Source: Klebsormidium nitens (taxonomy: Eukaryota > Plantae > Klebsormidiophyceae). From it: DNA of 64,000 bases. The notes beneath the pieces are model-generated. The model ran no database searches and was not told the origin of the DNA. It saw nothing but the letters and a program-made list of their open reading frames with translations. Below, piece after piece: positions 35,832-49,700 of this stretch. Where the stretch lies: positions 57,540-121,539 of the forward strand of contig DF237202.1 of NCBI GenBank assembly GCA_000708835.1. The letters run 5' to 3'. The position numbers and the translations under genes were made by a program. The first letter of the stretch is position 1; every line of letters begins with the position of its first letter.

Positions 35832-38800
35832 TCATGACGTCACCACAGACGCGCGCCCCGCCCTCAGTTGCAGTCGTTCCACCTCGTTCAGCACTCGGGG
35901 GAACTCCAGGAACAACCGGGAGTCTCTCCCGAGCAGTCCGCTCCGCCCCCCCGCGCTGTCCTTCGGCTGCCGGTTGTTCCCCGTCAGGTTGTTGCACGGG
36001 CTTCCCCCGGCCACCAGATCGAACGGCCCCTCCGCGATTAGCTCCGCGATTCTCGGGGTCGTGAGCTGCTTGATGTCTGTGACGAACGAGAGTTCCCCGG
36101 AGTTTCCCAGATTATGGACGCGCCACCAATGGTCTACAACGGTTCGGCAGTGCTCGTCGATCTCGACGCTGATGTAGCGCTTGATGGTGACGCCGAGGCG
36201 CCAGAGCGCGACGCCGAGGCCCGAGATTCCGTCGAAGAGCGACAGGACGGAGATTCCGCCCGGGATGGAACGGAAGTAGGGCACCAGCGGCGAGAGAAGG
36301 CGAGCGATTGTGTCGACCTGCAAGAGTGCGGGTGCTCAATTTGTAGTAGATTCTTTCCCGGCTGGAGACCTCCGGTTGCAAGATAGCCCGGGATAGGGGG
36401 TCAAACACTTCGCTTGCGAACCGCTCTACCTTGTTGCAAGTGACTAAAGCGAGCAGGACTTTCATGTTATGAGTCAGATGGCGCCGATGATCCGCACCTG
36501 ACATAACAATGTCCTTCGTATCTCCATCACGTGCTTCGCTTCTGATTAAAAGTCCAGGTTCAATAGATAATCCACCTGGGCCAAATTTTAAGAACGCGGC
36601 AGCGACACTTTCGCTCGCGACCTGGATTTCCGGCCTTTTGTATTGGAGCAATCAGAGGCACCCACTCTTGGTGCAATTCGAAACTTGACGAACTATCTGG
36701 CTAGGAGAGACGAAGAGTAACATAATCTGAAGACCCTAACTTCTCAGTCCTGAGGTTTTCGGGCTAACTGAAATCCTGAAATTTTCTAAGGTCCCAAAAC
36801 ACAGCACTACATTCAAGCACATAGAAAACCTAACTGGAACGGAATAGTACCAGAACGGAATCTACCCGCTGGCAGGATCTGCCCCGAGTCTCAATGGGAT
36901 CCCTGATACAAGCCAACAAACTGAAGTTGCAAACTTTTGAGCAGAGCAAAGAATGAAAGAGCACGAAATTACCCGGACAAGTTGCCTAGGAGCTCGAACA
37001 GAAAGCGGCTCCAAGAAGCCCCCACCCGGGTGGATACCAGAACCGTACGGCTTTGCTGCCCAAGGTTTTTCAAAAGTCAAGGGCCACTTTGTGAATTTCG
37101 AAGTTCTTGACAAAAGCGATCCGCCAGGAGTTCAAAGACCCGGCTCCGAGGAAAAGCCGCACTCGGGTGTCGTACCAAAACTGTAACAATTGCTGGCCTA
37201 GGGTGCCCACATTCTCGAAAGGTTTACGCGCCAACATCCTCAAACCCTGTACACCTTGACAAAGGTAGCTCAGAACACGTGCCGGGAACGAGTGCCGAGG
37301 AGCTCGGAGACCCGGCTCCAAAGGGATGCCGTTCTCGTCTGCGCTACAAGAACGTGCAGACCTGTCGTTCCGAGACCCGCCCACGATGTCGAAGCCAGAC
37401 AAGCGCCCTATTTTCCCAAGAATCGGACGCTTTAACACACAGAAACCCAACACAAGACAAGCTTGCCTGGAACGAGTTGCCGAGAAGCTCGAAGACTTTG
37501 CTCCGAGGGATGCCGCACTGTCGTGCTACCACAAACTCGCAGATCTGCTGGCAGGCAACTCCCCAAATCTCCACAAGGTCAAGCGTAAACGTCTTGAACC
37601 ATGAACTTACTGACAGGCAACGCCCAAAACACGTACCTGGAACGAGTTGCCGAGCAGCTCGAAGACTTTGCTCCGGGGGATCCCGCAGCGAGTGTGGCCC
37701 CTTGGGAACCCCATGATTGTCTCCACTTCCTCCTCTCGAATATTCGCCACGCTGGTGGGGCTTGTGAAGATGAGGTTGTACGACCTGCAGTTGCGCAAAT
37801 GACTTGCTTCATGGATTTTGAAATGTTCGGTCTCATGGTGTTTGAGCGTGCTAGGGGGGTTTGACACCTCGGAAAACAACGAAAGCTATCAAGGGTAACA
37901 CCGATCGAACTCGAATTGAATCAAAATGGATGCAGAACTGTTGCGGGGACCCAAACGATTGCCAATACCACTGAATACACGGACTCAGTCGATGTGCTAG
38001 CGGTTTCTGAGATCTTGACCGGTTTTCAAGGCCGAGCTTTTGAAAAGCACACCGACGTGCATATCGCCTAGTCAGACACTTGGTGACGTCGGATCAAAGG
38101 GCTCCACGTCAATTGGTGAAGCTGGGCGAGGCCACCACGAGCTAAATCCGCCGACTCTGCCTCGAAACCCTCTATTCAAAACCAAGCGTGTTACAAACAC
38201 GACAATGCAGATTCTGGCAGCAAACCCTGCTTCGTTGTCGAGCTACGTTCCGACGCACCTGATCAACGCCCTCCGCTTTGTGTTCAGCGATGGGTTCATC
38301 GCCCCCCCCGGCTGCCGCAGTATCTTGTTCAGTACGCCGATCATATTGGGGTGCAGCTCCTTGGTGTTTATCATGTTGAGCTTGTCGGTCGTTTTGCGAC
38401 GGTCCCACTCCGGGAAGTTGGCGGCATACTGGGGCCACACTTCGGAGATGCGCAGCGGAGCCAGGGGTTCGAGAGTGGTCCGGCCGGCGCGGGGAATGTT
38501 GTGAGGGTACCTGGGTTAAGGAGGGGTTAGGACGGGTTAGTGGAAGGCCTGCTTGTGAGAAGTGGCTTAGTGGGAAGTGAATTAGGGGACGGTCAAGGAC
38601 GATTCGAAGGGAGCCTTGGGAGGACTGGTTCATTCACTGAGACCATTTGAAAATGGCATTGGGAGGAGGGTTTCTGGAGGACTGTTGAAAGGCAGTTGTG
38701 GCTACATGATCTGACGAAAATCATCAGATCGGAGTCAAGTTGTCCCAGACGAAAACCGAGTGTGCTCAAATCATTGCAAGAACATCTCAGATCCGCTGAA

Positions 38801-41800
38801 AAGGGTTTGGAACAAACGGCTTTCTGCTTGACTGCATCCGGGGGAATGTCCGAGACAATCCCCAGTTCTCGTCGGCCGGCAAGCATCCCTTGGAACAGCC
38901 AATCAGTCGAAGTTTCGAGATCAGCAACAAGCTGCAAACTTCCAAGCTGACGTCAAGCACCCGGTGATCAGGCATATGCCCACGTCCTAACCTATCTAAG
39001 CTGCCCTGTGTTTGGAAACAAGTCTGGACAGCAAGCACGATAAAAATTACAAAATTTGGAGGGAGCAGGAAGCCTGGAAAGCTTCAAGAGCGCTCTGCAC
39101 ACAGACTGCCAACACACAACTCGGCGGCCAATCATGCATGACAGCTGTCAACCTTAAAGGGATCACAACTTGCTCACTTTCGCTTGCGGTTCGCCACAGA
39201 GTACTCCACGCTGTTGATCTCCTCCGGAGGGATCCCCCAAAGGTGCCGCTGCATGAGGTCCCACACATTTTCCCGCTCCTCTAGTTCCCCGTCCGGCCCC
39301 ACCCCCGACTGCCCCCTGTTCGCGTGCGCCACGTTCTCAAAGAAAAAGAGGAACGTCCGGGGGCCGTTTTCCACCGCCGGCCGCCACCGCTGCTCGAAAT
39401 CTTCTGCAACCACAGGGCCGCGCGCAGCTGCCACGTGGCGCCTTCTGTTGGCGCTGACTTCACCAATGACGTCATCTTCGTCAAGCTGGAACTCGTTGTC
39501 GACCTCCGACTCGGGCCCCTCCTCTTCCGACGCGGCCCCGCACGACCGTTCCTGCTTCCGGGTCTTGCCGCTTTGCGAGCATGGCTCGACTTCCCGTGGT
39601 TTGACGGGCCCCCGATTTCCGTTCCGGTACAGGTAGAGCGGAATGTCGTCCGGTTTGCTATAGTCCTCCCCCTCGACTAGGATCTTCACGTCTTCTTTCC
39701 AAAGCGCGACCCACTCTACTTCGTCGTCAATGAGATACTTGACTTTATGGCGGTGCGAAGGCGGGTCGTACTCGACCGCCTTTGCGGTGTAGTACTTCTT
39801 GTCGACGTCCCACCAGATCGCAAACGCATCGATCAGAACTTCGACCTCCTCCCCCAAAAGGCTGAGAATCGCGCCGGGGTGGTTCTCCTCCTGCAAAAGC
39901 TCCGCCTCTAATAGCGGCACATCCACCCCCCCTGTGAAAGCGGTGCCTCCGACCCCCCCCGAGAGTTCGTCGCCACTCAGGGGCGGAAGATGGCGCTCGA
40001 AAGGTGCTGTGGGTTGGTCGTTGTTGGGAACGGGTCCAAGTTTGGACCGTTTTGGCGAGTGTGTGGGAGTTCCGCTAACGAAGTAGGGTTTGGGCAAGAC
40101 GGGAGGGGTTAGGCTCTGAGGGGCATCAGCAGCCGACTCAAGTCGATCCAAGCCGTCTGCGGGGTTTGACTGTCTAAAGGGGGGACGGCCTGTTTCCTGT
40201 TCAATCTCGTGGTTGCCTGGTTCTTCTCCCCAGCTAACGAAGTCAAACGACTCCTCAAAACCGCCCCTCCCGCTCTGTTTGGACCGCTCAAAAGGCTCCG
40301 GCGGAATGCACGCGTTTGGTTCCGTCCGATATAGTCCGGTTCCGCCCCTTTCCGTCGAGTTCCGGGTAAGTCCCAGTGCTTCCGTCCGGAACTGCTTGCG
40401 CCCGCCTGGCGCCATGCAGTCCCATCCGAACCCCTCTGGATCCGTACGGCTCCATTCGAACACCCGCCCTCTTGTCCGAATGCGTCCGCTTCCGTCCAAG
40501 TCCGTCTGGTTCCGCTCCGTTCCGTCCATTCCCCCGGATTCAAGTGCCCCAAACCCTGCTCCTCCGGCTTCACTGCGCACATCCCGGGCTTGAGGATCCG
40601 GGCCTCCGCTCAGCAAATCAGCAGCTTCCACGTGGCACGTTTCTCCTGCTCCGACTAACCCGTCCAGATTCGGCATTGCTCCAGTCGACGCCTCCTCTTC
40701 CCTGGGGCCCTCTTCCGCTCGGCCAGGGACTCCGATGCCGCTCTGCCGACTGCAGACGCTTGGTTCCGGCCTCTTGCTCTCGTTCCGTCGTTCCGCTCCT
40801 CCAGCCTCGGCACCTTCAGAGACGCCGCCTGGCATGAAAGCCATCAGTGAGGGGAGGCGAGTCTCGCAAGGCAGCAGTCCCCGTTCTGCTTGGGCTGTCC
40901 CGGTCGTTTCTCTGCCTCTTCCACTTGTGCCGGGAGCGGGTTCCGTTGGGCGCACGTCCGAAGGTTCCGGCGGAACGCCCTCGTCCAGAACCAACCGAAA
41001 GCCCCCGCTGCAGCGCTCACCGACTCTACACTCTTCTCCCGTATCACCGGCGCCCCGCTGACTTTCTGCTCGCCAAACGGGGGTGGATTTCCTAGCCAAA
41101 TCCACCCCCCTTGCCGAAGATTGCCGGACTCCGCCTGCTTCAGCACCCACACCAGGCTCTCCTTGGAATTGCCCACAATCTCCGGGCCAGTTGGTCATTC
41201 TGTGCCCTAAACCCGCATCCAAACCCCCGGTTAAACCCCAATCCAAGCCGGGCTGCGCGGGACTATTTCCTGCCGAACCCCTCCCAGCACCGTCTGCTTG
41301 GATCCGATCAAAACCCTCGAACGGGGTTCGAGCAGAAGAGTCCACGTCCAGGGGGGGCAATTTCGTGCCTGATGTGACCCCCCCTTGCTCCGCAACTGGG
41401 CGCCTTCTGCGATTGACGCGCAGCGGTGGGCTGCTGTCTTCGTCGTCATCGTGAACAGGAGTCTCGTTTAGCGGGGGCACGTTTGAGGGGACGGGGGTTC
41501 CGCTCGAAATGGGGGCGGCGCCGAGTTCTGGTTGGTTTGATGGGGGAGTGTTGGTGATGTCAGAGCCCGCCTCCTGAAAGAAAAGTAAAGCACAGCCACG
41601 TGTCAGCCGTCTGCAACATTTTCCCTCAAGAACGAAGCCGAATAGACATTGTCAATCCAAGGTCCCGGAAGGTGGCTGACACATTATGTCGTGTGCAAAC
41701 CCTTGAATTTCCTGAGACACTCCTCGCTGACTCCGGGTTCTTGTACAGCAGACTCCTACTCCCGATATCTTTGCCAATGGAAACAGGCTGGAACCTCCGA

Positions 41801-44636
41801 TACCTGTCTTTTCAGCACAGAGGAACGACTCGTTTTGTGACTCAGCTTTTCTTGTCCTGGCCTCAGCCAAACGAGCCCTTTCACTAACATCCTGAAAGTG
41901 TGAACAAACCAGCGAGAAGAAAGGACGAGCTTCTGGATTCAAGCCAAACTTCGGATCGTCGAGAAGGGTAACCCCGCCAACCAGCATCTCAACCTGGAGG
42001 CAGCCCAGAAATTTGACAATTGAAGCAGATGGGTCAAGGGTACAGAAGAACTAAACAAGAGTTGAGGAAACCGAACTTGATTTCCACGAGTCCCTCCCAT
42101 TACTCTATTGGTCCCCAGCCCGACCTTCCTCAGTTGACGTAATTAGGAAACATAGACAACGACAAGAAGTCTGTGAAACCCGTGCCCAGTGGCTTCACAG
42201 TTTTGCTGACAAGGAGATTCTCTCACGTCTAGTTCCGCCTCCACGTCTTTGGCCAGGATCCAGTCGAGCGCATCCGTCACGCTGCCCCCTCTAGTTGCGC
42301 CCACCGCCTGTCGCGCCTGTTTTGAGGCGTAGCCCATTTCAACCAGTTGTTGGATCCGGGAATCCGGTTCCGCTGACGCTTTCGTTCCTCTTTTGGGGCT
42401 GGGAGACGCCTGCACAATTGGTTGTCAACTCGTTCGCTCCCTATGCATCAACCTCCAGCCTTTGACCAGCTGTGCAAGGCGCTTCTTTTCCGAGGAGGAT
42501 ACTTTGCTGGGTCCTTAAAGGCTGGAAGAAACCTGGAAGAAGGTCGGTGCTGATGCATGATCAGATTTGCCCACAAGTCCTCTTGCGTGGCCTTATCAGA
42601 CGCAACCAAATCAAGAAATAACAAGTCACAGAGAAAGCCCCTGATGGTCGTTTCAGAGGGAGACTCCTGCAAATGCCCCTCAGGTGGCGTAATGTGATTC
42701 GATTCTTTATTTCTCTTGACTTGTCTTCCTTCAAACAAGAAGTAGCCTGTGTGCCGACCAGTTGCTGCGATAGCGAGTTGAACCCTGTCTGACTCGTACG
42801 TTCTTCACAGAATCTTTCGCTCCAACTACGATGACGGTTATGATCACTCTGCTTCTGTCAAAACACAGCTCCATTCTGCACAGGCCAGAAATTGCCACGT
42901 GTCGATTCACATCATCCATCTTCCCCCTGCCCACAAATCATTTCTCCACAAGCTGCCACGTGTCACTCACCGCGGCCACCTGATCGTGTCCCCTCTTCTT
43001 CCCTCCCCGGCTCATCGCCCGAATCGCGTCCAGATTCTCTAACTTCAACCGGGCCCCGTTCGGAAGCTCGACGAACTCAAACGCCAGGAGCTCCTGAGCC
43101 ACGCGCCACCGGAGCCGCTCGAAATGGGGCCTCAGACGGGCCGGGAGACGGGCGCCCAGGTCGGCGGCCGAGAGGGTTGGGGTTTGGGAGAGCAAGTTGT
43201 AGACGGCCGCGGCGAGGTCTGCTTCAGTCTGAAGGGGTTCGAAAAGGGGCCTGATGAAAAGAACGGACGAGCTGTCAGATGCAAGCCTGGAACTTCTCAT
43301 TGAGAAAGGTGCCCGCGTGGTGATGAAATAGCTACTTGAACGGGGAGTGTGTGGAAAGGGCTCGAAGCGGGGAGAAAATACGGTAACAAGAGGCGCGGAC
43401 CTTGACTAAACGGTCGGTAACGATCTTTTGCGACTGTCCGAGGCCGCAGGTTTCTTTCAACTGAATCTCGGTAGTATATGTTCTAGGAGGCCCCCAGAAT
43501 CGTAATGGAGTCGGGCAGGTCCCAAGTCACTACCAACATCTACATTGCTTGGTTGCGAATAACGGCTTTGTTGGCCAGCAGGGGCGACTGAAGGAATGGT
43601 CTGCCAGGGGGAAATTCTAATATAAGGCCCGTTCAATGATACTGGCTAGCTGTTAGCCCATGCACCCAAAGAGCCCATATGCTTGTTTGACCAGGCGACC
43701 AATTCGTGGAGACTCTCTGATGACGTGTCCCAAAGGGTTTGGACCATCTGGTGAATCATAGGTGTCCAAGCTTGTTAGGCAGGGACTCTGATATTCGAAA
43801 TGAGGCACAGAGAGCCAAGATTGATCATGACTGTTCTCCCGAAACGGAAGGCGAACTGGGAATTTCTCTGGTCGTCTTCGATTCCTTGAAACAACGCTGT
43901 GAATTCAAACCTTCCAGCCTGCGAACTAGACAGACCCGACTAGCCTTGAAGTATTTCATCCAGGTCAAAAGCTCAAAGCTTGACAAAGAAAGCAATCAAT
44001 GCATCTTTGGCCCCAATCAGTCATGTCGTTATGAGTCATGTCGTCTTTGGAAGGGAGATAACGTTTGTCAAAGCTGATACTCTCCCAGCACCGATACGCA
44101 CACGCAAAACAAGATGGCCATCATAGATCGTCTTAGTCCCTCAGTCCCGATCATATCATGCACCAGACACATTGATTGAAAAGTCTGCCTCACCTATACT
44201 CCTCGGCTGGGTCTCCGAGCGCATAGTGGGCTCTTGTTGTCGAGATCCAAATCAGCAGCTGCTTCTCCCCGTACCCCTGAAACGACCGCTCCAGTATCGG
44301 CCCGATGTCCTTCACTTTGCAGCCCCGACTCTGTAACTGCGCGGCCCCCAGACCCTCCCTTTCTGAACAGCCCACTTCTGTGATCTGTCTTTGTGACAGC
44401 CCGCCTCTGTCATATGGTTCAACAGTCCCACTGAATAGAAGATCTGCCCCCTCCAACACTTCTTGGATCTGACGCAAGTTGTTGGTATGACGGCAGTAGA
44501 TTTGGAAGTGGGTCAATCTCCGCCAGGGCCGACGGTCTTCGGCATTGTCGCAGTCGCCGAACCTGGCTGCCACGCCTAGTTCCTCCGTTTGCAGAATTGC
44601 AGACGTCTCGAACGCGGTGGGCAGGGCAGAGTCCAT
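35832..44636 (-). CDS. DRM: DRM-type (domains-rearranged) C5 cytosine DNA methyltransferase with N-terminal RFTS, UBA and Tudor-like domains, ~1395 aa
   Basis: Exons 44636-44194, 43250-42971, 42409-42227, 41573-39178, 38510-38259, 37784-37637 and 36317-35832 are phase-consistent (a possible extra exon lies near 41890-41765; the start codon is uncertain). Catalytic motifs are in DRM order: VI FFFENVA, VIII NRKRKYPHNIP, IX/X EEEVETIMGFPRGHTR...LGNSFQVDT, then I VLSLFDGISG and IV FDLVAGGSPCNNL. Confidence 0.92.
36960..37680 (-). repeat. Degenerate tandem array (~155-185 bp period) of the 3' end of a DRM exon plus its donor site
   Basis: The true exon end CGGAGCAAAGTCTTCGAGCTGCTCGGCAACTCGTTCCAG|gtacgt (37637) recurs near-identically at ~37467 (|gcaagc) and progressively more decayed at ~37283, ~37105-37160 and ~36973. 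Confidence 0.75.
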
Positions 44637-46774
44637 TGCAGCTTCTCAGCATGCACGAGGATCTACGCCGGGGTACGCAATGGTTGCGGTGGCTTGTTTA
44701 CTTCCAGAGCCCTCGAAGTGTCTGCATAGGAAGCGAGCAGAGTATGATGAACCAGAAGAAAGTAAGAGGATTCATTGGATGTCACTGCACTCAAATGAAA
44801 CAACTGTCGCAGATGTACTAGCTAAGAAGTGTTGATTAAGCTTCTTCGTACTGACCAAGCAACGGGCTGGACCTGCATTCCGAGACTGCTCTGGTTAAAG
44901 AGTACATGAATCAGCTTGCAAATTTCTTTTACTTACTGAGTTCCTTTTCACTGGGCAGCAGTCATTCAACTTAACTTTCTACCGGCGTCACTCGGCCTAA
45001 TCTGGGCACCCAATAAATCAAACCTCTATTGACACAGGCGGACAGTAAACTCCGTGTGAAGAGACAGCTTGAAACTGATCTGCATGCCGGAAATGTGGCG
45101 ATGGGAGGGTGGGCATGAACACACCTTTTGGTTACATCCCTTCTGAAAAGAAGTGATCAAGTTGTTCAGACCGCTACCTAAACACTGGATGATTGCTGAG
45201 ACTCAGCTGACTCGTCAGCAAGAAATTGCTGGATTTGGTCTGCACTGGTAAGTGGGCTTGTATTGATTTGACAACTATACCGTGTCTCAACTTGTCACAC
45301 ATCATCAAGTAGAGCCTGTTAGCAAGCCGCTCGAACTTAGAAGTGGTGCTAGGGGCAGCACAGGCCAACTTTTTTTGTGCATTTTTTCTCCAAAGGCCCT
45401 TCCAAAATGTACCGCTGCAGTCAAGTTGTCAACGATGTGACCCATTCGCTCAGTTTCAGATCATAGCAACCACCTTTCGAGAGAAACCAAATGCCCTCCA
45501 TCTCTGATTGCAAAGACCGCTCCACAAAAAGTCCAATGCCCCATTGCAATACCCACCTGTAGCTTCCATTCCACTGAAGAGAACCACAAGTCGTTGCCTT
45601 ACGCCCTTGAAAACCCAAGGTGCGCTGTTCTGTCCCTCTCAGTGGTCTCGCCTCACACAGCATTCTATCAGCATTCAACAAGGCGCCCCCAAATGCCAAC
45701 GGCTACAGTTTGCTGCGCCATTGCTTGTTTTATCAGCAGTAGAGCAGAGCGTCTTGGAACAGCAGATGGCAGCTGCTTGGGCAGGAGCAGGTGCAAAAGA
45801 CTTCCTGGCAACCTGTGATTCCCCATTCCTCTTGAAAGGGCGGCCAAGTTGCTCCCGTATACATTCAAGAGGACTAAACTTTGAAATTTGATCTTGCATT
45901 CACAATCACGGGTCTGGGTCCTGCATTGATCTGACTGCAGCCTGCAGGAACTGAAACATTTGAGGAGGAAGCTTGCAAGGAGGGAACCATGATGTCCACT
46001 GTCGCTCACTGTGACTACGGTATGAGTGAAATGCATACCTGTGTGAAATGAGTGAAGTGCATACCTGTGAGCAAGCTGTTCGGCCTACGACGGGCCCTGA
46101 CGGCGGATCTTCCCGGCACTGGATACTTCTCCCGAGTGCCCAAACCGCGCCCGGGGAGGTCCTCGAGTCTTGACCAGTGACTCCTGAGTCCCGACTCCTG
46201 AATCAGAGGACTCAAGACGTCCCGGCCCGCTTTGCAATTTGAAGAGCACCGGGCTATCTGATCGAGATACTTTGCGGCAGCTGGCCGTCAATGCGGAAGG
46301 CAAGTTCGTGCTGGAATCTTGCCTGCCAATACCACTGCCAGGGCAATGCAAGAGAAAGGAGGGATTCGGAGAAAGCTCAAGATTGCCCACTGCCACTGCC
46401 AGCGCTACGTTTTGAGGCTCTTCCTTTCAACAGAAAAGCTTGCGCATTATGACGGATTGAGGCTGGGCAAGGTCCGTGATTTAATTGCGCCTTCATGTGG
46501 AAGCTGTCATCTTTGTACCTGAGAGTTTGCTCCTGTTATGGTATGTCATCGATTTCGAGATTGGAATCCCGACGAAGTGGCAGCGGGGGCAGGATTTCTT
46601 GCAGCTCCTGAAGTCTGCAGCTGCTCCTAGTGCTACCGCTCGGTGGCGAATTTCGGGCGCTTTGTTGCGGGAGATGGCCCCATGATAGACAAAATGAAAA
46701 GACAAGGGGATGCAATGTGAGAGAATGGCGAGGAAGAAAAGATCAGAGGATGACCGGAAAGAAAACGTGCGGTG

Positions 46775-49700
46775 ATGGAGAAAGGGCGGGGGTCTTCCCG
46801 CGGAGCGAGTAACCGCCGGCGCCCCCGGGGGGGCTCTCGGTGGTCGCCCACCAAGAAACCAAGGCCGGTTTGGCTCGCGGTTTTGCTCCCCTTCCTAGTT
46901 CTCCTGGTCCTGATCCAGCTGGCGCAGCCCTTGCTGAAAGATGAACAAAGCTGGTGGACCAAGGAGCTCTTTCTTCAACCGCCGTTTGCGAAAGTTTCGG
47001 AAGTGCGGACGGCGATCTGTCTCTCAGGGGGAGCGCGCTCGTTTGAGCTCACGGGACCGAGCATTAAGGATCGGCTGCTGAGCGCTTATCCCAACAGCGA
47101 CGTGTTCCTGGTGGTGCCCTTTGATGCGGACGCCCATAAGCTATCGCTGCTGGCCGGGACGGGGAACATCGTGCACGCTGAGGTGGCGGTGCAGGCGCTG
47201 ATGCGCGAGGATGATGTCAGCAAGGAGCTGTTTGATGAAATTGGATCGCCGAATGGAGTACAGGTGAGGTGGCAGAGTGTCATTGGCCGCTTCAAATCTG
47301 CTTCTTGTTTCTAGATCTTTAGTGGTTGAGAGCATGTCAAGTATAGGGACTCAAAACCGTCGAGTGCTCTGTGAGTTCTGGTTTGTTGATATCTGGTTGT
47401 TGAGGTTTTCCATATGTCCATCTCACCAGCTTTTGCTAGATTGGATGCGAATCTTGTAGACAATATTGCGGCATTGTTTGGGCGTTGCATTTCATTTTTC
47501 ACACCAACACACGAGGCTTCCAAGTTCCTGAAACAGGCAGCAACTATTCAGCTGAGTTTCTGCTATCCGAAGTTGGGACACGAGAATTTCGGGAGTTGCC
47601 GCCTTGAACCTGTGTGTACCCATCTGTATCTTCCTGCCAAAGTTTTGGGATTGCACAACCAGATTCTAGCGACCTTTGTTCACAGCAGGTTAGGAAGTAA
47701 GCCTCCTGTAGAGGGCGGCAGAAGATGAGGTATGCACCCAGATTTCGTGGCGGAGCCCTGTTTTTGTTCACAGACTTGAGAGTTCTGCCAGCTCTTGTGT
47801 GACACTTCTGGGCACATGGCTGGGAAGTTTGTTTCAGCACTCTTTGTTTTGTTAGATGTCATATACACAGACCTGATAGATCCCAGTTCTAGTGTCCTTT
47901 CCCTCGCTGTCGTGAGTTTTGTCTAGTGAACTGCCTGTCGGTCATGATGATTGTGCATTTTGCAGCTGGCTGGAGGCGGTCACGATAAAAAGAGCATCGC
48001 GCTTGAGACTTTCTGGGTCGTTCATTAACCATGCTCGAAATAAGTGTGTCAGACGGGAGGAGGATCATGCATCCCTTGCTGATACATTTTTGACACCGGC
48101 TTCCTGCCTGCTTTCTCCTTGGCTGTTCGCCTTGCTCTAGTGTCAGATTGTTGTGAATTCACTCCCTTTCTTTCGCACGACCGTTTGGAGCAAGCGAGGG
48201 CTGCTTGCCGTGCAGTTTTTGTGTCACTTTTGGAGTCTCCTCTTCATTGCCTTCGCGTTTTCCCCTTTTGACCAAGGTTCAAGATGTACAGCTCCTCTGG
48301 TGAAACAGATTAGCTTGGACCCTTTTGAGTGCACTCGCTTGGTCACACCCCTTCGAATACAGCCCCCTCTCGAAATCAAAGCAAAGCCCTCTTCTCATTT
48401 TGAGTCCCATCGTGTGGCCCAGTTCAGCCTTTTCCGTTCATCCAGAGAACCATCAGTGCCAGATCGGACATTTGGTAAGGTTCATCTGACAATAGGGTAA
48501 CCAGCATAGCGTTGCACAAGGCTTCTGGAAGAATCGGCCCACAGACAGACTGAGACAGCCGCCAAACTATGTACCGGACTCTTAACATGTCAAGGCCTTT
48601 TATCTGCTTGATAAAGCCTGCACCTTTATACACGTTGAAGAAGACGGCAATGTTGGTGGAGGAAATTTGTGGTGAATGATTGGTGGAGAATAATTTCCGC
48701 TGTACCTGGATCCTGTCAGCACAGAGCGGAGCTGGGAGACAAACGGCATTTGACCTAGGAGCCCCTCTCAGCTGAAAGACCATTCTCTGATCTTCAGAAT
48801 TCACGGTCCCCATTCTGAAGAGGACCCCAAAAACGACTCCGGTCGAGAACCTTGACCATTTGCTGTGCCCCCCTCCCTGCAAAAAAGCTCTCCTTTCTTT
48901 CTCCTCTGTTTAGTAAGCGTTGTCAAAGTGCGCTTCACTACTTTCTGCGTCCCGCAAAAGCTGCTCCAGTTAAGCTTCTCTGGGCTTTTTCAGGTTTTCT
49001 CCCTTCGCTTGTACATATCCGCCCACGTTTCTTGTTCACTGCACTTACTAGACTCCAACTCCCCTGCTCAAGTCTTCTGTTGATATCCCGACGCTCTTGG
49101 CACAGTCTTTTCATTCTGACAGTTTCTCAGTTTTCACCACTCGCTCCGTGTCTGTGCTGTCTCTTTGTCTACATGTTTCCCCTCCCAAGTCGCTGAACTA
49201 TGTCTGTGGCCGGACTGCGGTCTTTACAAATTGGAGAAGTGATTGAAACGTGAGAACGGATTGAATGGAAAGTTCCTCATCTTGCTTCTTTGACCTCTCT
49301 CCCTCACCCCCTACTCGCCGCAGGATCTAACAGGTAGCTGTTGCTCTTGCAGTAGACACTGCAGCTGTTGCTGGACGCATCGCCAAAACAACCTTAACCT
49401 CTTCCCTCTATTCCTTGCTCCTCAGCTTTTCTGGCGCATCGTTTTCTTGCCCCTCCAGACTTAGTTACGCATGGCTTTCCTTCACTTCTTCAACGAACTA
49501 AAGCCTGAACGCAGAGTCTTTGAAACACTGTCAAACCTATTTTATTGCAGGGCCTCCTCCAGTACTTCGCCCTCGTCGAGTCGTGCCAGGCCGCCATTAC
49601 CGCCCACGAGCGTACCCACCGTTTCCGCTACGCTTACGTTCTCCGCACGCGGCCCGATGGGTTCTGGAACGCCCCCCCCCCGCCGCTCTCCACCTTCGAG

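What the first reader, a model, noticed from the sequence alone, without database searches (positions are those of the whole stretch)
35832..44636. A DRM de novo methyltransferase wearing a DNMT1-type RFTS domain plus UBA and Tudor readers
Seen: the catalytic domain has DRM's rearranged motif order (ENV, RKR and GNSFQV precede LFDGISG and GGSPC) with the catalytic PC intact. Exons 44636-44194 and 43250-42971 splice in frame to give DRRPWRRLTHFQIY...LLFSGTVEP...IGPILERSFQGYGEKQLLIWISTTRAHYALGDPAEEYR|PLFEPLQTEADLAAAVYNLL, the signature I recognise as RFTS (DNMT1-RFD). A UBA (RIQQLVEMGYASKQARQAV...VTDALDWIL) and a Tudor-like module (LLGEEVEV...IWWDVDKKYYTAKAVEYDPPSHRHKVKY..DDEVEWVAL, ~39680-39870) follow. 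Established: angiosperm DRM2 carries only UBA domains and is targeted by RdDM, while RFTS typifies DNMT1/MET1 and in DNMT1 binds ubiquitylated H3. Inference: this is a chimeric methyltransferase targeted by chromatin marks (ubiquitin via RFTS/UBA, methyl-lysine via Tudor) rather than small RNA, possibly an early or alternative state of plant de novo methylation. I do not know of this architecture being described, but cannot exclude it.
Basis: partly seen in the sequence, partly recalled or inferred. Interest (0 to 1): 0.88.

Follow-up and report, generated by a model that had tools for sequence, protein, structure and literature searches.

The report
RFTS-bearing DRM methyltransferase of Klebsormidium
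This Klebsormidium nitens gene (already catalogued as KfDRMb) encodes a plant-type "domains-rearranged" DNA methyltransferase with a DNMT1/MET1-type RFTS domain at its N-terminus, a combination I found only in Klebsormidium-like algae and found discussed in none of the papers I could read.

Summary
Seven GT-AG exons on the minus strand (44636-35832) give a 1395-aa protein. It is identical to the annotated K. nitens protein, listed as KfDRMb (kfl00253_0110) in Yaari 2019.

- **RFTS:** Pfam 66 bits, E 4e-18, with the match running across the exon 1/2 junction. The AF2 model (pLDDT 82) hits DNMT1, MET1 and DIM2 RFTS structures in Foldseek (E 2e-13).
- **UBA:** real (UBA_7, E 1.5e-8).
- **Catalytic domain:** collinear with tobacco and Arabidopsis DRM structures (E 3e-59). 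PC, ENV and GNSFQ are intact.
- **"Tudor":** a conserved, beta-rich 105-aa module, but not shown to be a Tudor. There is no Pfam hit, the best PDB match is E 0.013, and the model has pLDDT 52. The cage Trp equivalent is Arg in two of four orthologues.

The exon order recurs in relatives: all seven exons in one, with matching intron positions, and the first four in another. RFTS, UBA and Tudor-like parts have dN/dS 0.13-0.23; the linker has 0.71.

I found no RFTS-DRM outside this lineage. K. nitens also has a 697-aa DRMa and a DNMT3, so "ancestral state" is unsupported. Targeting by ubiquitylated H3 is a plausible inference and remains untested.

The parts
44194..44636 (-). Exon 1 (aa 1-148). 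Start codon, with an in-frame TGA 12 nt upstream. Encodes the RFTS N-lobe (beta-barrel). Includes a K. nitens-specific loop insertion of about 20 aa (aa ~78-100) that is modelled with low confidence.
42971..43250 (-). Exon 2 (aa 148-241). Encodes the RFTS C-lobe (helical bundle). The junction codon AG|G encodes R148.
   Evidence: dN/dS 0.13 against L002.
42227..42409 (-). Exon 3 (aa 242-302). Encodes a single UBA domain.
   Evidence: Pfam UBA_7 and UBA. dN/dS 0.23.
39924..41573 (-). First part of exon 4 (aa 303-852). A Gly/Pro/Glu/Arg-rich, fast-evolving linker, presumably disordered.
   Evidence: No Pfam hit. No tblastn match to L001 between aa 380 and 848. dN/dS 0.71. Composition.
41406..41441 (-). 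Short conserved motif EDSSPPLRVNRR (aa 347-358) inside the linker.
   Evidence: Identical in P0001, P0002 and P0003.
39600..39923 (-). Conserved beta-rich "Tudor-like" module (aa 853-960). The fold assignment is unproven.
   Evidence: dN/dS 0.14.
39178..39392 (-). End of exon 4 (aa ~1030-1101). Start of the permuted methyltransferase domain, with motif VI (FENV) and the RKR motif.
38259..38510 (-). Exon 5 (aa 1101-1185). Middle part of the methyltransferase domain.
37637..37784 (-). Exon 6 (aa 1185-1234). Motifs IX-X, ending in GNSFQ.
35832..36317 (-). Exon 7 (aa 1235-1395 plus the stop codon). Motif I (LFDGISG) through motif IV (GGSPC) and motif V.
   Evidence: Pfam DNA_methylase. Also.
36838..37636 (-). 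Part of intron 6 holding four decayed tandem copies, each about 170 bp, of the exon 6 end and its donor site.
46772..47314 (+). Divergently oriented neighbouring gene (DUF7796) that bounds the 5' side of the locus. The same neighbour in the same orientation is present in relative L001.

Best explanation
The locus is one gene, KfDRMb of Klebsormidium nitens. Its domain order is RFTS (both lobes), one UBA, a linker of about 550 aa that is presumably disordered, a conserved beta-rich module of about 105 aa, and a circularly permuted DRM-type C5-cytosine methyltransferase domain that looks catalytically competent. That much is shown or strongly supported (about 0.85).

The mechanism is inferred, at about 0.4. 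The RFTS, probably helped by the adjacent UBA, would bind ubiquitylated histone H3 tails, or another mono-ubiquitylated replication-coupled mark, laid down by a VIM/UHRF1-type ligase on already methylated DNA. It may also hold the catalytic domain inhibited until that ligand binds. This is how RFTS works in DNMT1 and in Arabidopsis MET1. The result would be a DNMT3/DRM-type enzyme under DNMT1-type, self-reinforcing chromatin control, which could help perpetuate non-CG methylation on silent transposons. The conserved beta module would give a second, still unidentified, chromatin or partner contact. Nothing here excludes that the enzyme also works with an RdDM-like pathway.
For: **One gene**
- All seven exons join in frame with GT-AG borders. 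The product is identical to the annotated 1395-aa protein.
- The RFD profile match continues in register across the exon 1/2 junction.
- All seven exons, in the same order, with introns at the same protein positions and phases (intron 2 ambiguous), occur in relative L001 at about 55% identity. Exons 1-4 occur in order in L003 at about 46-68%.
- A divergent DUF7796 neighbour bounds the 5' end in both K. nitens and L001.

**Domains**
- RFTS. UBA. DRM domain.

**Selection**
- dN/dS is 0.13 for RFTS exon 2, 0.23 for UBA, 0.14 for the beta module and 0.17 for the N-terminal part of the methyltransferase domain. The linker is at 0.71.

**Precedent for the mechanism**
- Arabidopsis MET1 RFTS1 and RFTS2 bind dual mono-ubiquitylated H3. 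RFTS2 and the connecting linker autoinhibit the enzyme, and H3ub relieves this (PMC12474915).
- The DIM2 RFTS reads H3K9me3 and gates activity (PMC11315935).
- K. nitens has CHG and CHH methylation on silent transposons (PMC5890265).
Against: - No transcript data were available here, so co-transcription of the RFTS exons with the catalytic exons rests on annotation and comparative structure.
- No ubiquitin- or H3-binding residue of RFTS was verified. The DNMT1 W464/W465 pair that reads H3K9me3 aligns to R-S ("ERS" against "EWW"; the residue numbering is from my memory).
- The DRMb RFTS is only about 20-30% identical to MET1 and DNMT1 RFTS domains and sits on a long branch, so its ligand may have changed.
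- I did not check here whether a VIM/UHRF1 ligase exists in K. nitens.
- K. nitens carries RdDM-type genes, so small-RNA guidance is not excluded.
Confidence: 0.5

Rival explanations
1. KfDRMb is still an RdDM-type, small-RNA-guided enzyme. In this reading the RFTS serves only as an autoinhibitory, dimerisation or protein-docking module with no ubiquitin reading. The long linker or the conserved beta module docks it to an AGO or Pol V-like complex.
For: - The literature read here reports an NRPE1-like subunit, a CLSY/DRD1 homologue and other RdDM-type genes in Klebsormidiophyceae.
- The closest sequence match of the beta module is the Tudor of RDM15, itself an RdDM factor that binds a Pol V subunit.
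- RFTS domains are known autoinhibitors.
Against: - The linker shows no AGO-hook signal. GW/WG counts are 3, 1 and 0 in three orthologues, against 1.7, 1.9 and 0.8 expected.
- The linker evolves almost neutrally.
- The RDM15 match is not significant.
- K. nitens has a separate, conventional-length DRMa that could serve RdDM.
Confidence: 0.25
2. The fusion is a gene-model artefact. On this view the RFTS exons (1-2) make their own short transcript of about 255 aa if the exon 2 donor is not used, and the DRM gene starts at or after the UBA exon.
For: - No transcript evidence was examined.
- Read-through of the exon 2 donor meets a stop after 14 codons, so a stand-alone product is formally possible.
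Against: - The introns between exons 2/3 and 3/4 are only 561 and 653 bp.
- Every junction is in frame with canonical splice sites.
- The same exon order recurs in L001 (~55% identity) and, for exons 1-4, in L003 (~46-68%); junction positions match in L001, apart from the ambiguous intron 2.
- The published annotation gives the full 1395-aa product.
Confidence: 0.1
3. KfDRMb is a catalytically inactive regulatory paralogue, like angiosperm DRM3. It would use its reader domains to bring or stimulate another methyltransferase such as DRMa or DNMT3.
For: - It is one of two DRM paralogues in K. nitens.
- Motif I reads FDGISG rather than the FxGIGG of NtDRM.
Against: - Motif IV GGSPC, motif VI ENV and motif X GNSFQ are intact and invariant between K. 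nitens and L001.
- The whole domain aligns with active NtDRM and AtDRM2 at E 3e-59.
- FDGIxxG is also the DNMT3A form of motif I (from my own knowledge).
- The N-terminal part of the catalytic domain is under purifying selection.
Confidence: 0.08

Closest known systems
DRM family: Arabidopsis DRM2, tobacco NtDRM (PDB 4onj, 7l4c), Marchantia MpDRMa
   Same: - Circularly permuted DNMT3-like catalytic domain, with motifs VI-X placed before motifs I-V.
- About 38% identity across the whole domain.
- Intact catalytic motifs.
- A UBA domain N-terminal to the catalytic domain.
   Different: - One UBA, where angiosperm DRM2 is usually described with three (my own knowledge).
- An N-terminal RFTS, a linker of about 550 aa and a conserved beta module. 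None of these was seen in any other DRM retrieved.
- At 1395 aa it is roughly twice the length of the paralogue KfDRMa (697 aa) and of the Marchantia DRMs (723 and 758 aa).
DNMT1 / MET1 / DIM2 maintenance-type methyltransferases
   Same: - They carry the RFTS (DNMT1-RFD) domain at the N-terminal side of a C5-methyltransferase domain.
- The fold matches over both lobes.
- In the RFTS tree the KfDRMb domain lies on the side that holds plant MET1 RFTS1-type domains.
   Different: - No BAH domains and no CXXC.
- The catalytic domain is of DNMT3/DRM type and permuted.
- The RFTS is only about 20-30% identical and sits on a long separate branch.
RDM15/PDS5C-type single Tudor domain (PDB 7de9, an H3K4me1 reader)
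   Same: - It is the best PDB sequence match of the conserved beta module, through a shared WW-x5-YY...Y pattern.
- The predicted secondary structure of the module is all-beta.
   Different: - The match is not significant (E 0.013; E 0.095 with a profile).
- There is no Pfam Tudor hit.
- The residue aligned to cage Trp616 is Arg in two of four orthologues. Asp643 aligns to Ile/Ala/Val, and Asp645 is kept in only two of four.
Animal DNMT3A/B (PWWP-ADD-MTase)
   Same: The general logic is the same: a de novo-type methyltransferase carrying its own chromatin-reader domains. The catalytic domains are related, with E about 1e-16 over motifs I-IV.
   Different: The reader domains are different (RFTS, UBA and an unknown module, against PWWP and ADD). 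The motif order is permuted.

Membership tests
DRM (domains rearranged methyltransferase) | Motifs VI-X precede motifs I-V in the primary sequence. | tested here: met
   - Collinear alignment with NtDRM and AtDRM2 over aa 1070-1386.
- A canonical-order DNMT (P0055) aligns in swapped order.
- ENV, RKR and GNSFQ lie upstream of LFDGISG and GGSPC.
DRM (domains rearranged methyltransferase) | Catalytic Pro-Cys (motif IV), ENV (motif VI) and the AdoMet loop (motif I) are present. | tested here: met
   GGSPC, FENV and LFDGISG are present. They are invariant or near-invariant against L001.
DRM (domains rearranged methyltransferase) | UBA domain(s) lie N-terminal to the catalytic domain. | tested here: met
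   UBA_7 at aa 259-302, 34.9 bits against a cutoff of 27.
DRM (domains rearranged methyltransferase) | The enzyme acts in RNA-directed DNA methylation, guided by small RNA and Pol V. | not testable with these tools
   This needs genetics or biochemistry. The linker has no AGO-hook enrichment.
RFTS / DNMT1-RFD domain (PF12047) | The profile match is above the Pfam gathering score. | tested here: met
   66.1 bits against a cutoff of 22, E 4.4e-18, profile positions 2-134 of 144.
RFTS / DNMT1-RFD domain (PF12047) | Two-lobe fold: a beta-barrel N-lobe and a helical C-lobe. | tested here: met
   AF2 pLDDT 82, pTM 0.78. Foldseek hits 6pzv, 5wvo, 3epz, 3av4, MET1 and DIM2 at E 2e-13 to 6e-4, with about 230 aligned columns for the isolated DNMT1 RFTS structures.
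RFTS / DNMT1-RFD domain (PF12047) | Binds ubiquitylated H3, or autoinhibits the catalytic domain. | not testable with these tools
   The only evidence is precedent from DNMT1 and MET1. The DNMT1 WW pair is not conserved.
DNMT1 / MET1 family | BAH domains and a canonical-order DNMT1-type catalytic domain. | tested here: not met
   No BAH hit even at E up to 10. The catalytic domain is DRM-type.
Tudor (royal family), RDM15/PDS5C type | Significant sequence or profile match to a Tudor family. | tested here: not met
   Pfam Tudor_3 gives E 0.23. 7de9 gives E 0.013 with a single sequence and E 0.095 with a profile.
Tudor (royal family), RDM15/PDS5C type | Five-stranded SH3-like barrel fold. | tested here: inconclusive
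   The model is all-beta but has pLDDT 52. Foldseek's best E is 0.39. Several Tudor domains appear among the weak hits.
Tudor (royal family), RDM15/PDS5C type | Conserved aromatic cage (W616, Y623, Y641) and Asp pair (D643, D645). | tested here: not met
   Using the alignment, across the four orthologues the residues are:
- W616 equivalent: W, R, W, R.
- Y623 equivalent: Y, H, Y, F.
- Y641 equivalent: Y, Y, F, F.
- D643 equivalent: I, A, V, A.
- D645 equivalent: D, D, R, G.

Sources: for the orthologues, for the RDM15 residues. The underlying alignment is itself weak.

The most novel reading that the evidence does not exclude
KfDRMb is a self-reinforcing, replication- or ubiquitin-coupled maintenance enzyme for non-CG methylation. 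In this reading a DNMT3/DRM catalytic core has been placed under DNMT1-style control, reading H3 ubiquitylation through RFTS and UBA, and works independently of small RNAs. This would be a third solution to perpetuating non-CG methylation in the green lineage, beside CMT-H3K9me2 and RdDM. It arose, or survived, only in Klebsormidiophyceae.
Probability: 0.2. Interest if true: 0.8.

Novelty: new variant of a known kind. Interest (0 to 1): 0.6.

Why it matters
RFTS is treated as a hallmark of the DNMT1/MET1/DIM2 maintenance lineage. DRM and DNMT3 enzymes are described with UBA, PWWP/ADD or DUF3444 companions, or with none.

A DRM paralogue with an RFTS kept under purifying selection shows that this regulatory module moved onto a de novo-type catalytic core at least once. 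It happened in the algal class where the papers read here place the first appearance of DRM and an NRPE1-like subunit, together with Charophyceae.

The locus offers a natural experiment on what an RFTS can do outside DNMT1. It also bears on how non-CG methylation was targeted before the angiosperm RdDM machinery was complete. The proposals are directly testable with recombinant domains and with existing K. nitens RNA-seq and methylome data.

Tried and rejected
1. **Homologue searches by domain.** The RFTS region as query found only the protein itself. The catalytic region found long DRMs, none with PF12047.
2. **RFTS profile against 1.84 billion representatives.** Beyond Klebsormidium-like exon fragments, every hit I characterised (P0006-P0025) is of MET1 or DNMT1 type or carries only RFD domains. 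None of the hits matches P0001 outside aa 8-281.
3. **Two metagenome scans,** one with the Tudor-like alignment and one with the last exon. Both found nothing.
4. **Tudor assignment.** Pfam, a PDB sequence search, a 4-species profile, AF2 with a 3-sequence alignment and Foldseek all stayed below significance.
5. **AGO-hook in the linker.** Rejected, because GW/WG counts are near chance.
6. **Extra exons between the UBA exon and exon 4.** The candidates at 41993-41804 and 41891-41804 break the frame (190 and 88 nt, worked out by hand from the sequence). The direct join is in frame and matches the annotation.
7. **BAH or CXXC domains, meaning a disguised DNMT1.** Absent.
8. **Literature.** No text mentions an RFD or RFTS in any DRM. 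The book chapter by Ma, Kim and Cerutti (2017) on domain organisation of algal DNMTs could not be read.

Full report
**Identity of the locus**

The window is eukaryotic, at about 52% G+C. On the minus strand, seven exons with canonical GT-AG borders join in frame to give a 1395-aa protein. The exons are 44636-44194, 43250-42971, 42409-42227, 41573-39178, 38510-38259, 37784-37637 and 36317-35832.

A search with the large exon returned a 100% identical, 1395-aa NCBI protein of Klebsormidium nitens named [quoted passage not shown]. Pfam PF22562 and PF12047 are already precomputed on it. Supplementary Table 1 of Yaari et al. 2019 lists a K. flaccidum/nitens DRM of exactly this length as KfDRMb (kfl00253_0110). 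The same table lists KfDRMa (697 aa) and KfDNMT3 (893 aa).

**Checking the domains**

*RFTS.*
- Exon 1 alone hits Pfam DNMT1-RFD at 44 bits, profile positions 2-103.
- The spliced protein hits at 66 bits, E 4.4e-18, profile positions 2-134 of 144. The match continues in register across the exon 1/2 junction, which is itself evidence for that splice.
- Sequence search of the PDB finds DNMT1 RFTS domains (6pzv_C, E 1e-10, query 6-194) and plant MET1 (E 4e-8).
- An AF2 model built on a 41-row alignment has pLDDT 82 and pTM 0.78, with a beta-rich N-lobe and a helical C-lobe.
- Its 18 significant Foldseek matches are all RFTS domains of DNMT1, MET1 or DIM2. The best is E 2.4e-13, with about 230 aligned columns.

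*UBA.* UBA_7 and UBA are above or at their cutoffs.

*Catalytic domain.*
- It aligns collinearly with tobacco DRM 4onj (E 3e-59) and Arabidopsis DRM2.
- A canonical-order DNMT aligns with the two halves swapped, which shows the circular permutation directly.
- FENV, RKR, GNSFQ, LFDGISG and GGSPC are present. They are conserved in the relative L001.
- No BAH or CXXC domain is present.

*"Tudor".*
- Amino acids 853-960 are strongly conserved: 59 of 105 positions are invariant among three species.
- No Pfam family matches; Tudor_3 gives E 0.23.
- The best PDB sequence hit is the RDM15/PDS5C Tudor 7de9 at E 0.013. A four-species profile gives E 0.095.
- An AF2 model from a three-sequence alignment is all-beta but has only pLDDT 52. 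Foldseek gives nothing significant, although several Tudor domains appear among the weak hits.
- I mapped the RDM15 cage residues (W616, Y623, Y641, D643, D645; PMC8184781) through the alignment. The Trp position is W, R, W, R in the four orthologues. The two Tyr positions stay mostly aromatic. D643 aligns to Ile/Ala/Val and D645 is kept in only two of four.
- The module is real and conserved. Calling it a methyl-lysine-reading Tudor is not justified yet.

**One gene or two?**

I had no transcript data, so the evidence is indirect.
- The annotation gives the full fusion.
- All junctions are in frame, and the introns after exons 2 and 3 are 561 and 653 bp.
- A 153-kb metagenome contig, L001, from a relative at about 55% identity carries all seven exons in the same order. 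Its introns lie at the same protein positions and phases: EYR|PLF, EAExD|, RKRK|Y, ALxR|SYNLIF and GNSFQ|VDT. Only intron 2 is ambiguous.
- A third lineage, L003 at about 46-68% identity, carries RFTS exons 1 and 2, the UBA exon and the large exon in order.
- L002 and L004 are close relatives of K. nitens and of L001 respectively, and carry parts of the gene.
- A DUF7796 gene lies divergently upstream of exon 1 in both K. nitens and L001. This bounds the 5' end of the locus.

Selection was measured between K. nitens and L002 unless stated otherwise:

| Region | dN/dS |
|---|---|
| RFTS exon 2 | 0.13 |
| UBA | 0.23 |
| Beta module | 0.14 |
| N-terminal part of the methyltransferase domain | 0.17 |
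| Linker | 0.71 |
| RFTS exons, L001 against L004 | 0.22-0.29 |

The RFTS is therefore a maintained, functional part of a conserved unit and not a decaying neighbour.

**Distribution and origin**

- An RFTS profile searched against 1.84 billion representative proteins gave 45 hits at E up to 0.001.
- The two best are exon-sized ORFs from Klebsormidium-like contigs. Every other hit I characterised (P0006-P0025) is a MET1/DNMT1-type protein or fragment, or carries only RFD domains, and includes sequences from Amborella and Rhododendron.
- None of them aligns to KfDRMb outside aa 8-281.
- Long DRM homologues, including Marchantia MpDRMa, have no RFD. They match only aa 1030-1388.
- In a quick ML tree of RFTS domains, the three DRMb sequences form one clade (SH-aLRT 95) on a long stem. 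They sit on the side of the tree that holds plant MET1 RFTS1-type domains, apart from the animal DNMT1 clade and the plant RFTS2 clade. This fits an old capture of a MET1-type RFTS, but the support is modest and the branch is long.
- K. nitens also has a conventional-length DRMa, and I found the RFTS form nowhere else. I therefore read DRMb as a lineage-specific paralogue. The alternative, that it is ancestral and was lost elsewhere, is not excluded. My searches of other charophyte classes were limited by the length and word filters of the tools.

**Mechanism**

*Shown.* The protein is a catalytically intact DRM domain preceded by a complete RFTS, a UBA and a conserved unknown module, and all of them are under purifying selection.

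*Inferred from established knowledge.*
- In DNMT1, the RFTS binds H3 mono-ubiquitylated by UHRF1 and plugs the catalytic cleft.
- In Arabidopsis MET1, RFTS1 and RFTS2 bind dual mono-ubiquitylated H3, RFTS2 and the connecting linker autoinhibit the enzyme, and H3ub relieves the inhibition (PMC12474915).
- In Neurospora DIM2, the RFTS reads H3K9me3 and gates activity (PMC11315935).

The most likely reading is that the RFTS, with its UBA neighbour, recruits and/or activates KfDRMb on ubiquitin-marked, already methylated chromatin. That would give a self-reinforcing route for the CHG and CHH methylation seen on silent K. nitens transposons (PMC5890265). I put this at about 0.4.

The main rival, at about 0.25, is that the enzyme is still small-RNA guided and the RFTS is only an inhibitory or docking module. 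The linker has no AGO-hook signature, which removes one route to that rival but not the rival itself. A gene-model artefact (about 0.1) and a DRM3-like inactive paralogue (about 0.08) are less likely, for the reasons given under those rivals.

**Comparison with what is known, and novelty**

By its catalytic domain and UBA the protein is a member of the DRM family. It also carries a bona fide member of the RFTS domain family. It is not a DNMT1 or MET1, because it has no BAH domain and its catalytic core is permuted and DNMT3-like.

The papers I could read either use only its methyltransferase domain (Yaari 2019) or describe the companion domains of the DNMT3 lineage without any RFD (Sarre 2025). 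None mentions an RFD or RFTS on a DRM. A 2017 book chapter on domain organisation of algal DNMTs could not be checked, and public databases already show the Pfam hit. I therefore rate the finding as a new variant of a known kind and of real interest to specialists.

Noticed in passing
window 36838-37700 (minus strand, intron 6): The last ~50 nt of exon 6 and its donor site, together with the start of intron 6, form the first ~170-bp unit of a tandem array. Four more units follow inside intron 6 and are progressively decayed. The second copy still reads GIPRSKVFELLGNSFQ, but its GT donor has changed to GC.
   Followed up: partly
window 46772-47314 (+) and L001 302-853 (-): A DUF7796 gene lies divergently upstream of the RFTS exon in both K. 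nitens and the ~55%-identical relative L001. The spacers are about 2.1 kb and 3.3 kb. This is conserved head-to-head synteny.
   Followed up: partly
window 41406-41441 (aa 347-358): The short motif EDSSPPLRVNRR is identical in three species, inside a linker that otherwise evolves almost neutrally. It could be a nuclear localisation signal or a docking motif.
   Followed up: no
window ~44335-44405 (aa ~78-100): K. nitens has an insertion of about 20 residues in an RFTS N-lobe loop that is absent from L001 and L003. It is modelled with low confidence (pLDDT about 50).
   Followed up: no
L003 4347-4599 and 8603-13255: The ENA contig has a frameshift inside RFTS exon 2. After about 8.6 kb it switches to bacterial-looking genes (SIS, Peripla_BP_6, ABATE). 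This looks like a low-coverage, possibly chimeric assembly. The catalytic exons of this relative were therefore not recovered.
   Followed up: no
not in the window (Yaari 2019, Supplementary Table 1): K. nitens has a second DRM of conventional length, KfDRMa (kfl00018_0570, 697 aa), and a DNMT3 (893 aa). The RFTS-bearing gene is therefore one of two DRM paralogues.
   Followed up: partly
window 41804-41993 (minus strand, intron 3): There is an open stretch with AG and GT borders (VEMLVGGVTLLDDPKFGL...). It is not in frame as an exon, at 190 or 88 nt, and is not in the annotation. A possible alternative or relic exon was not examined further.
   Followed up: no
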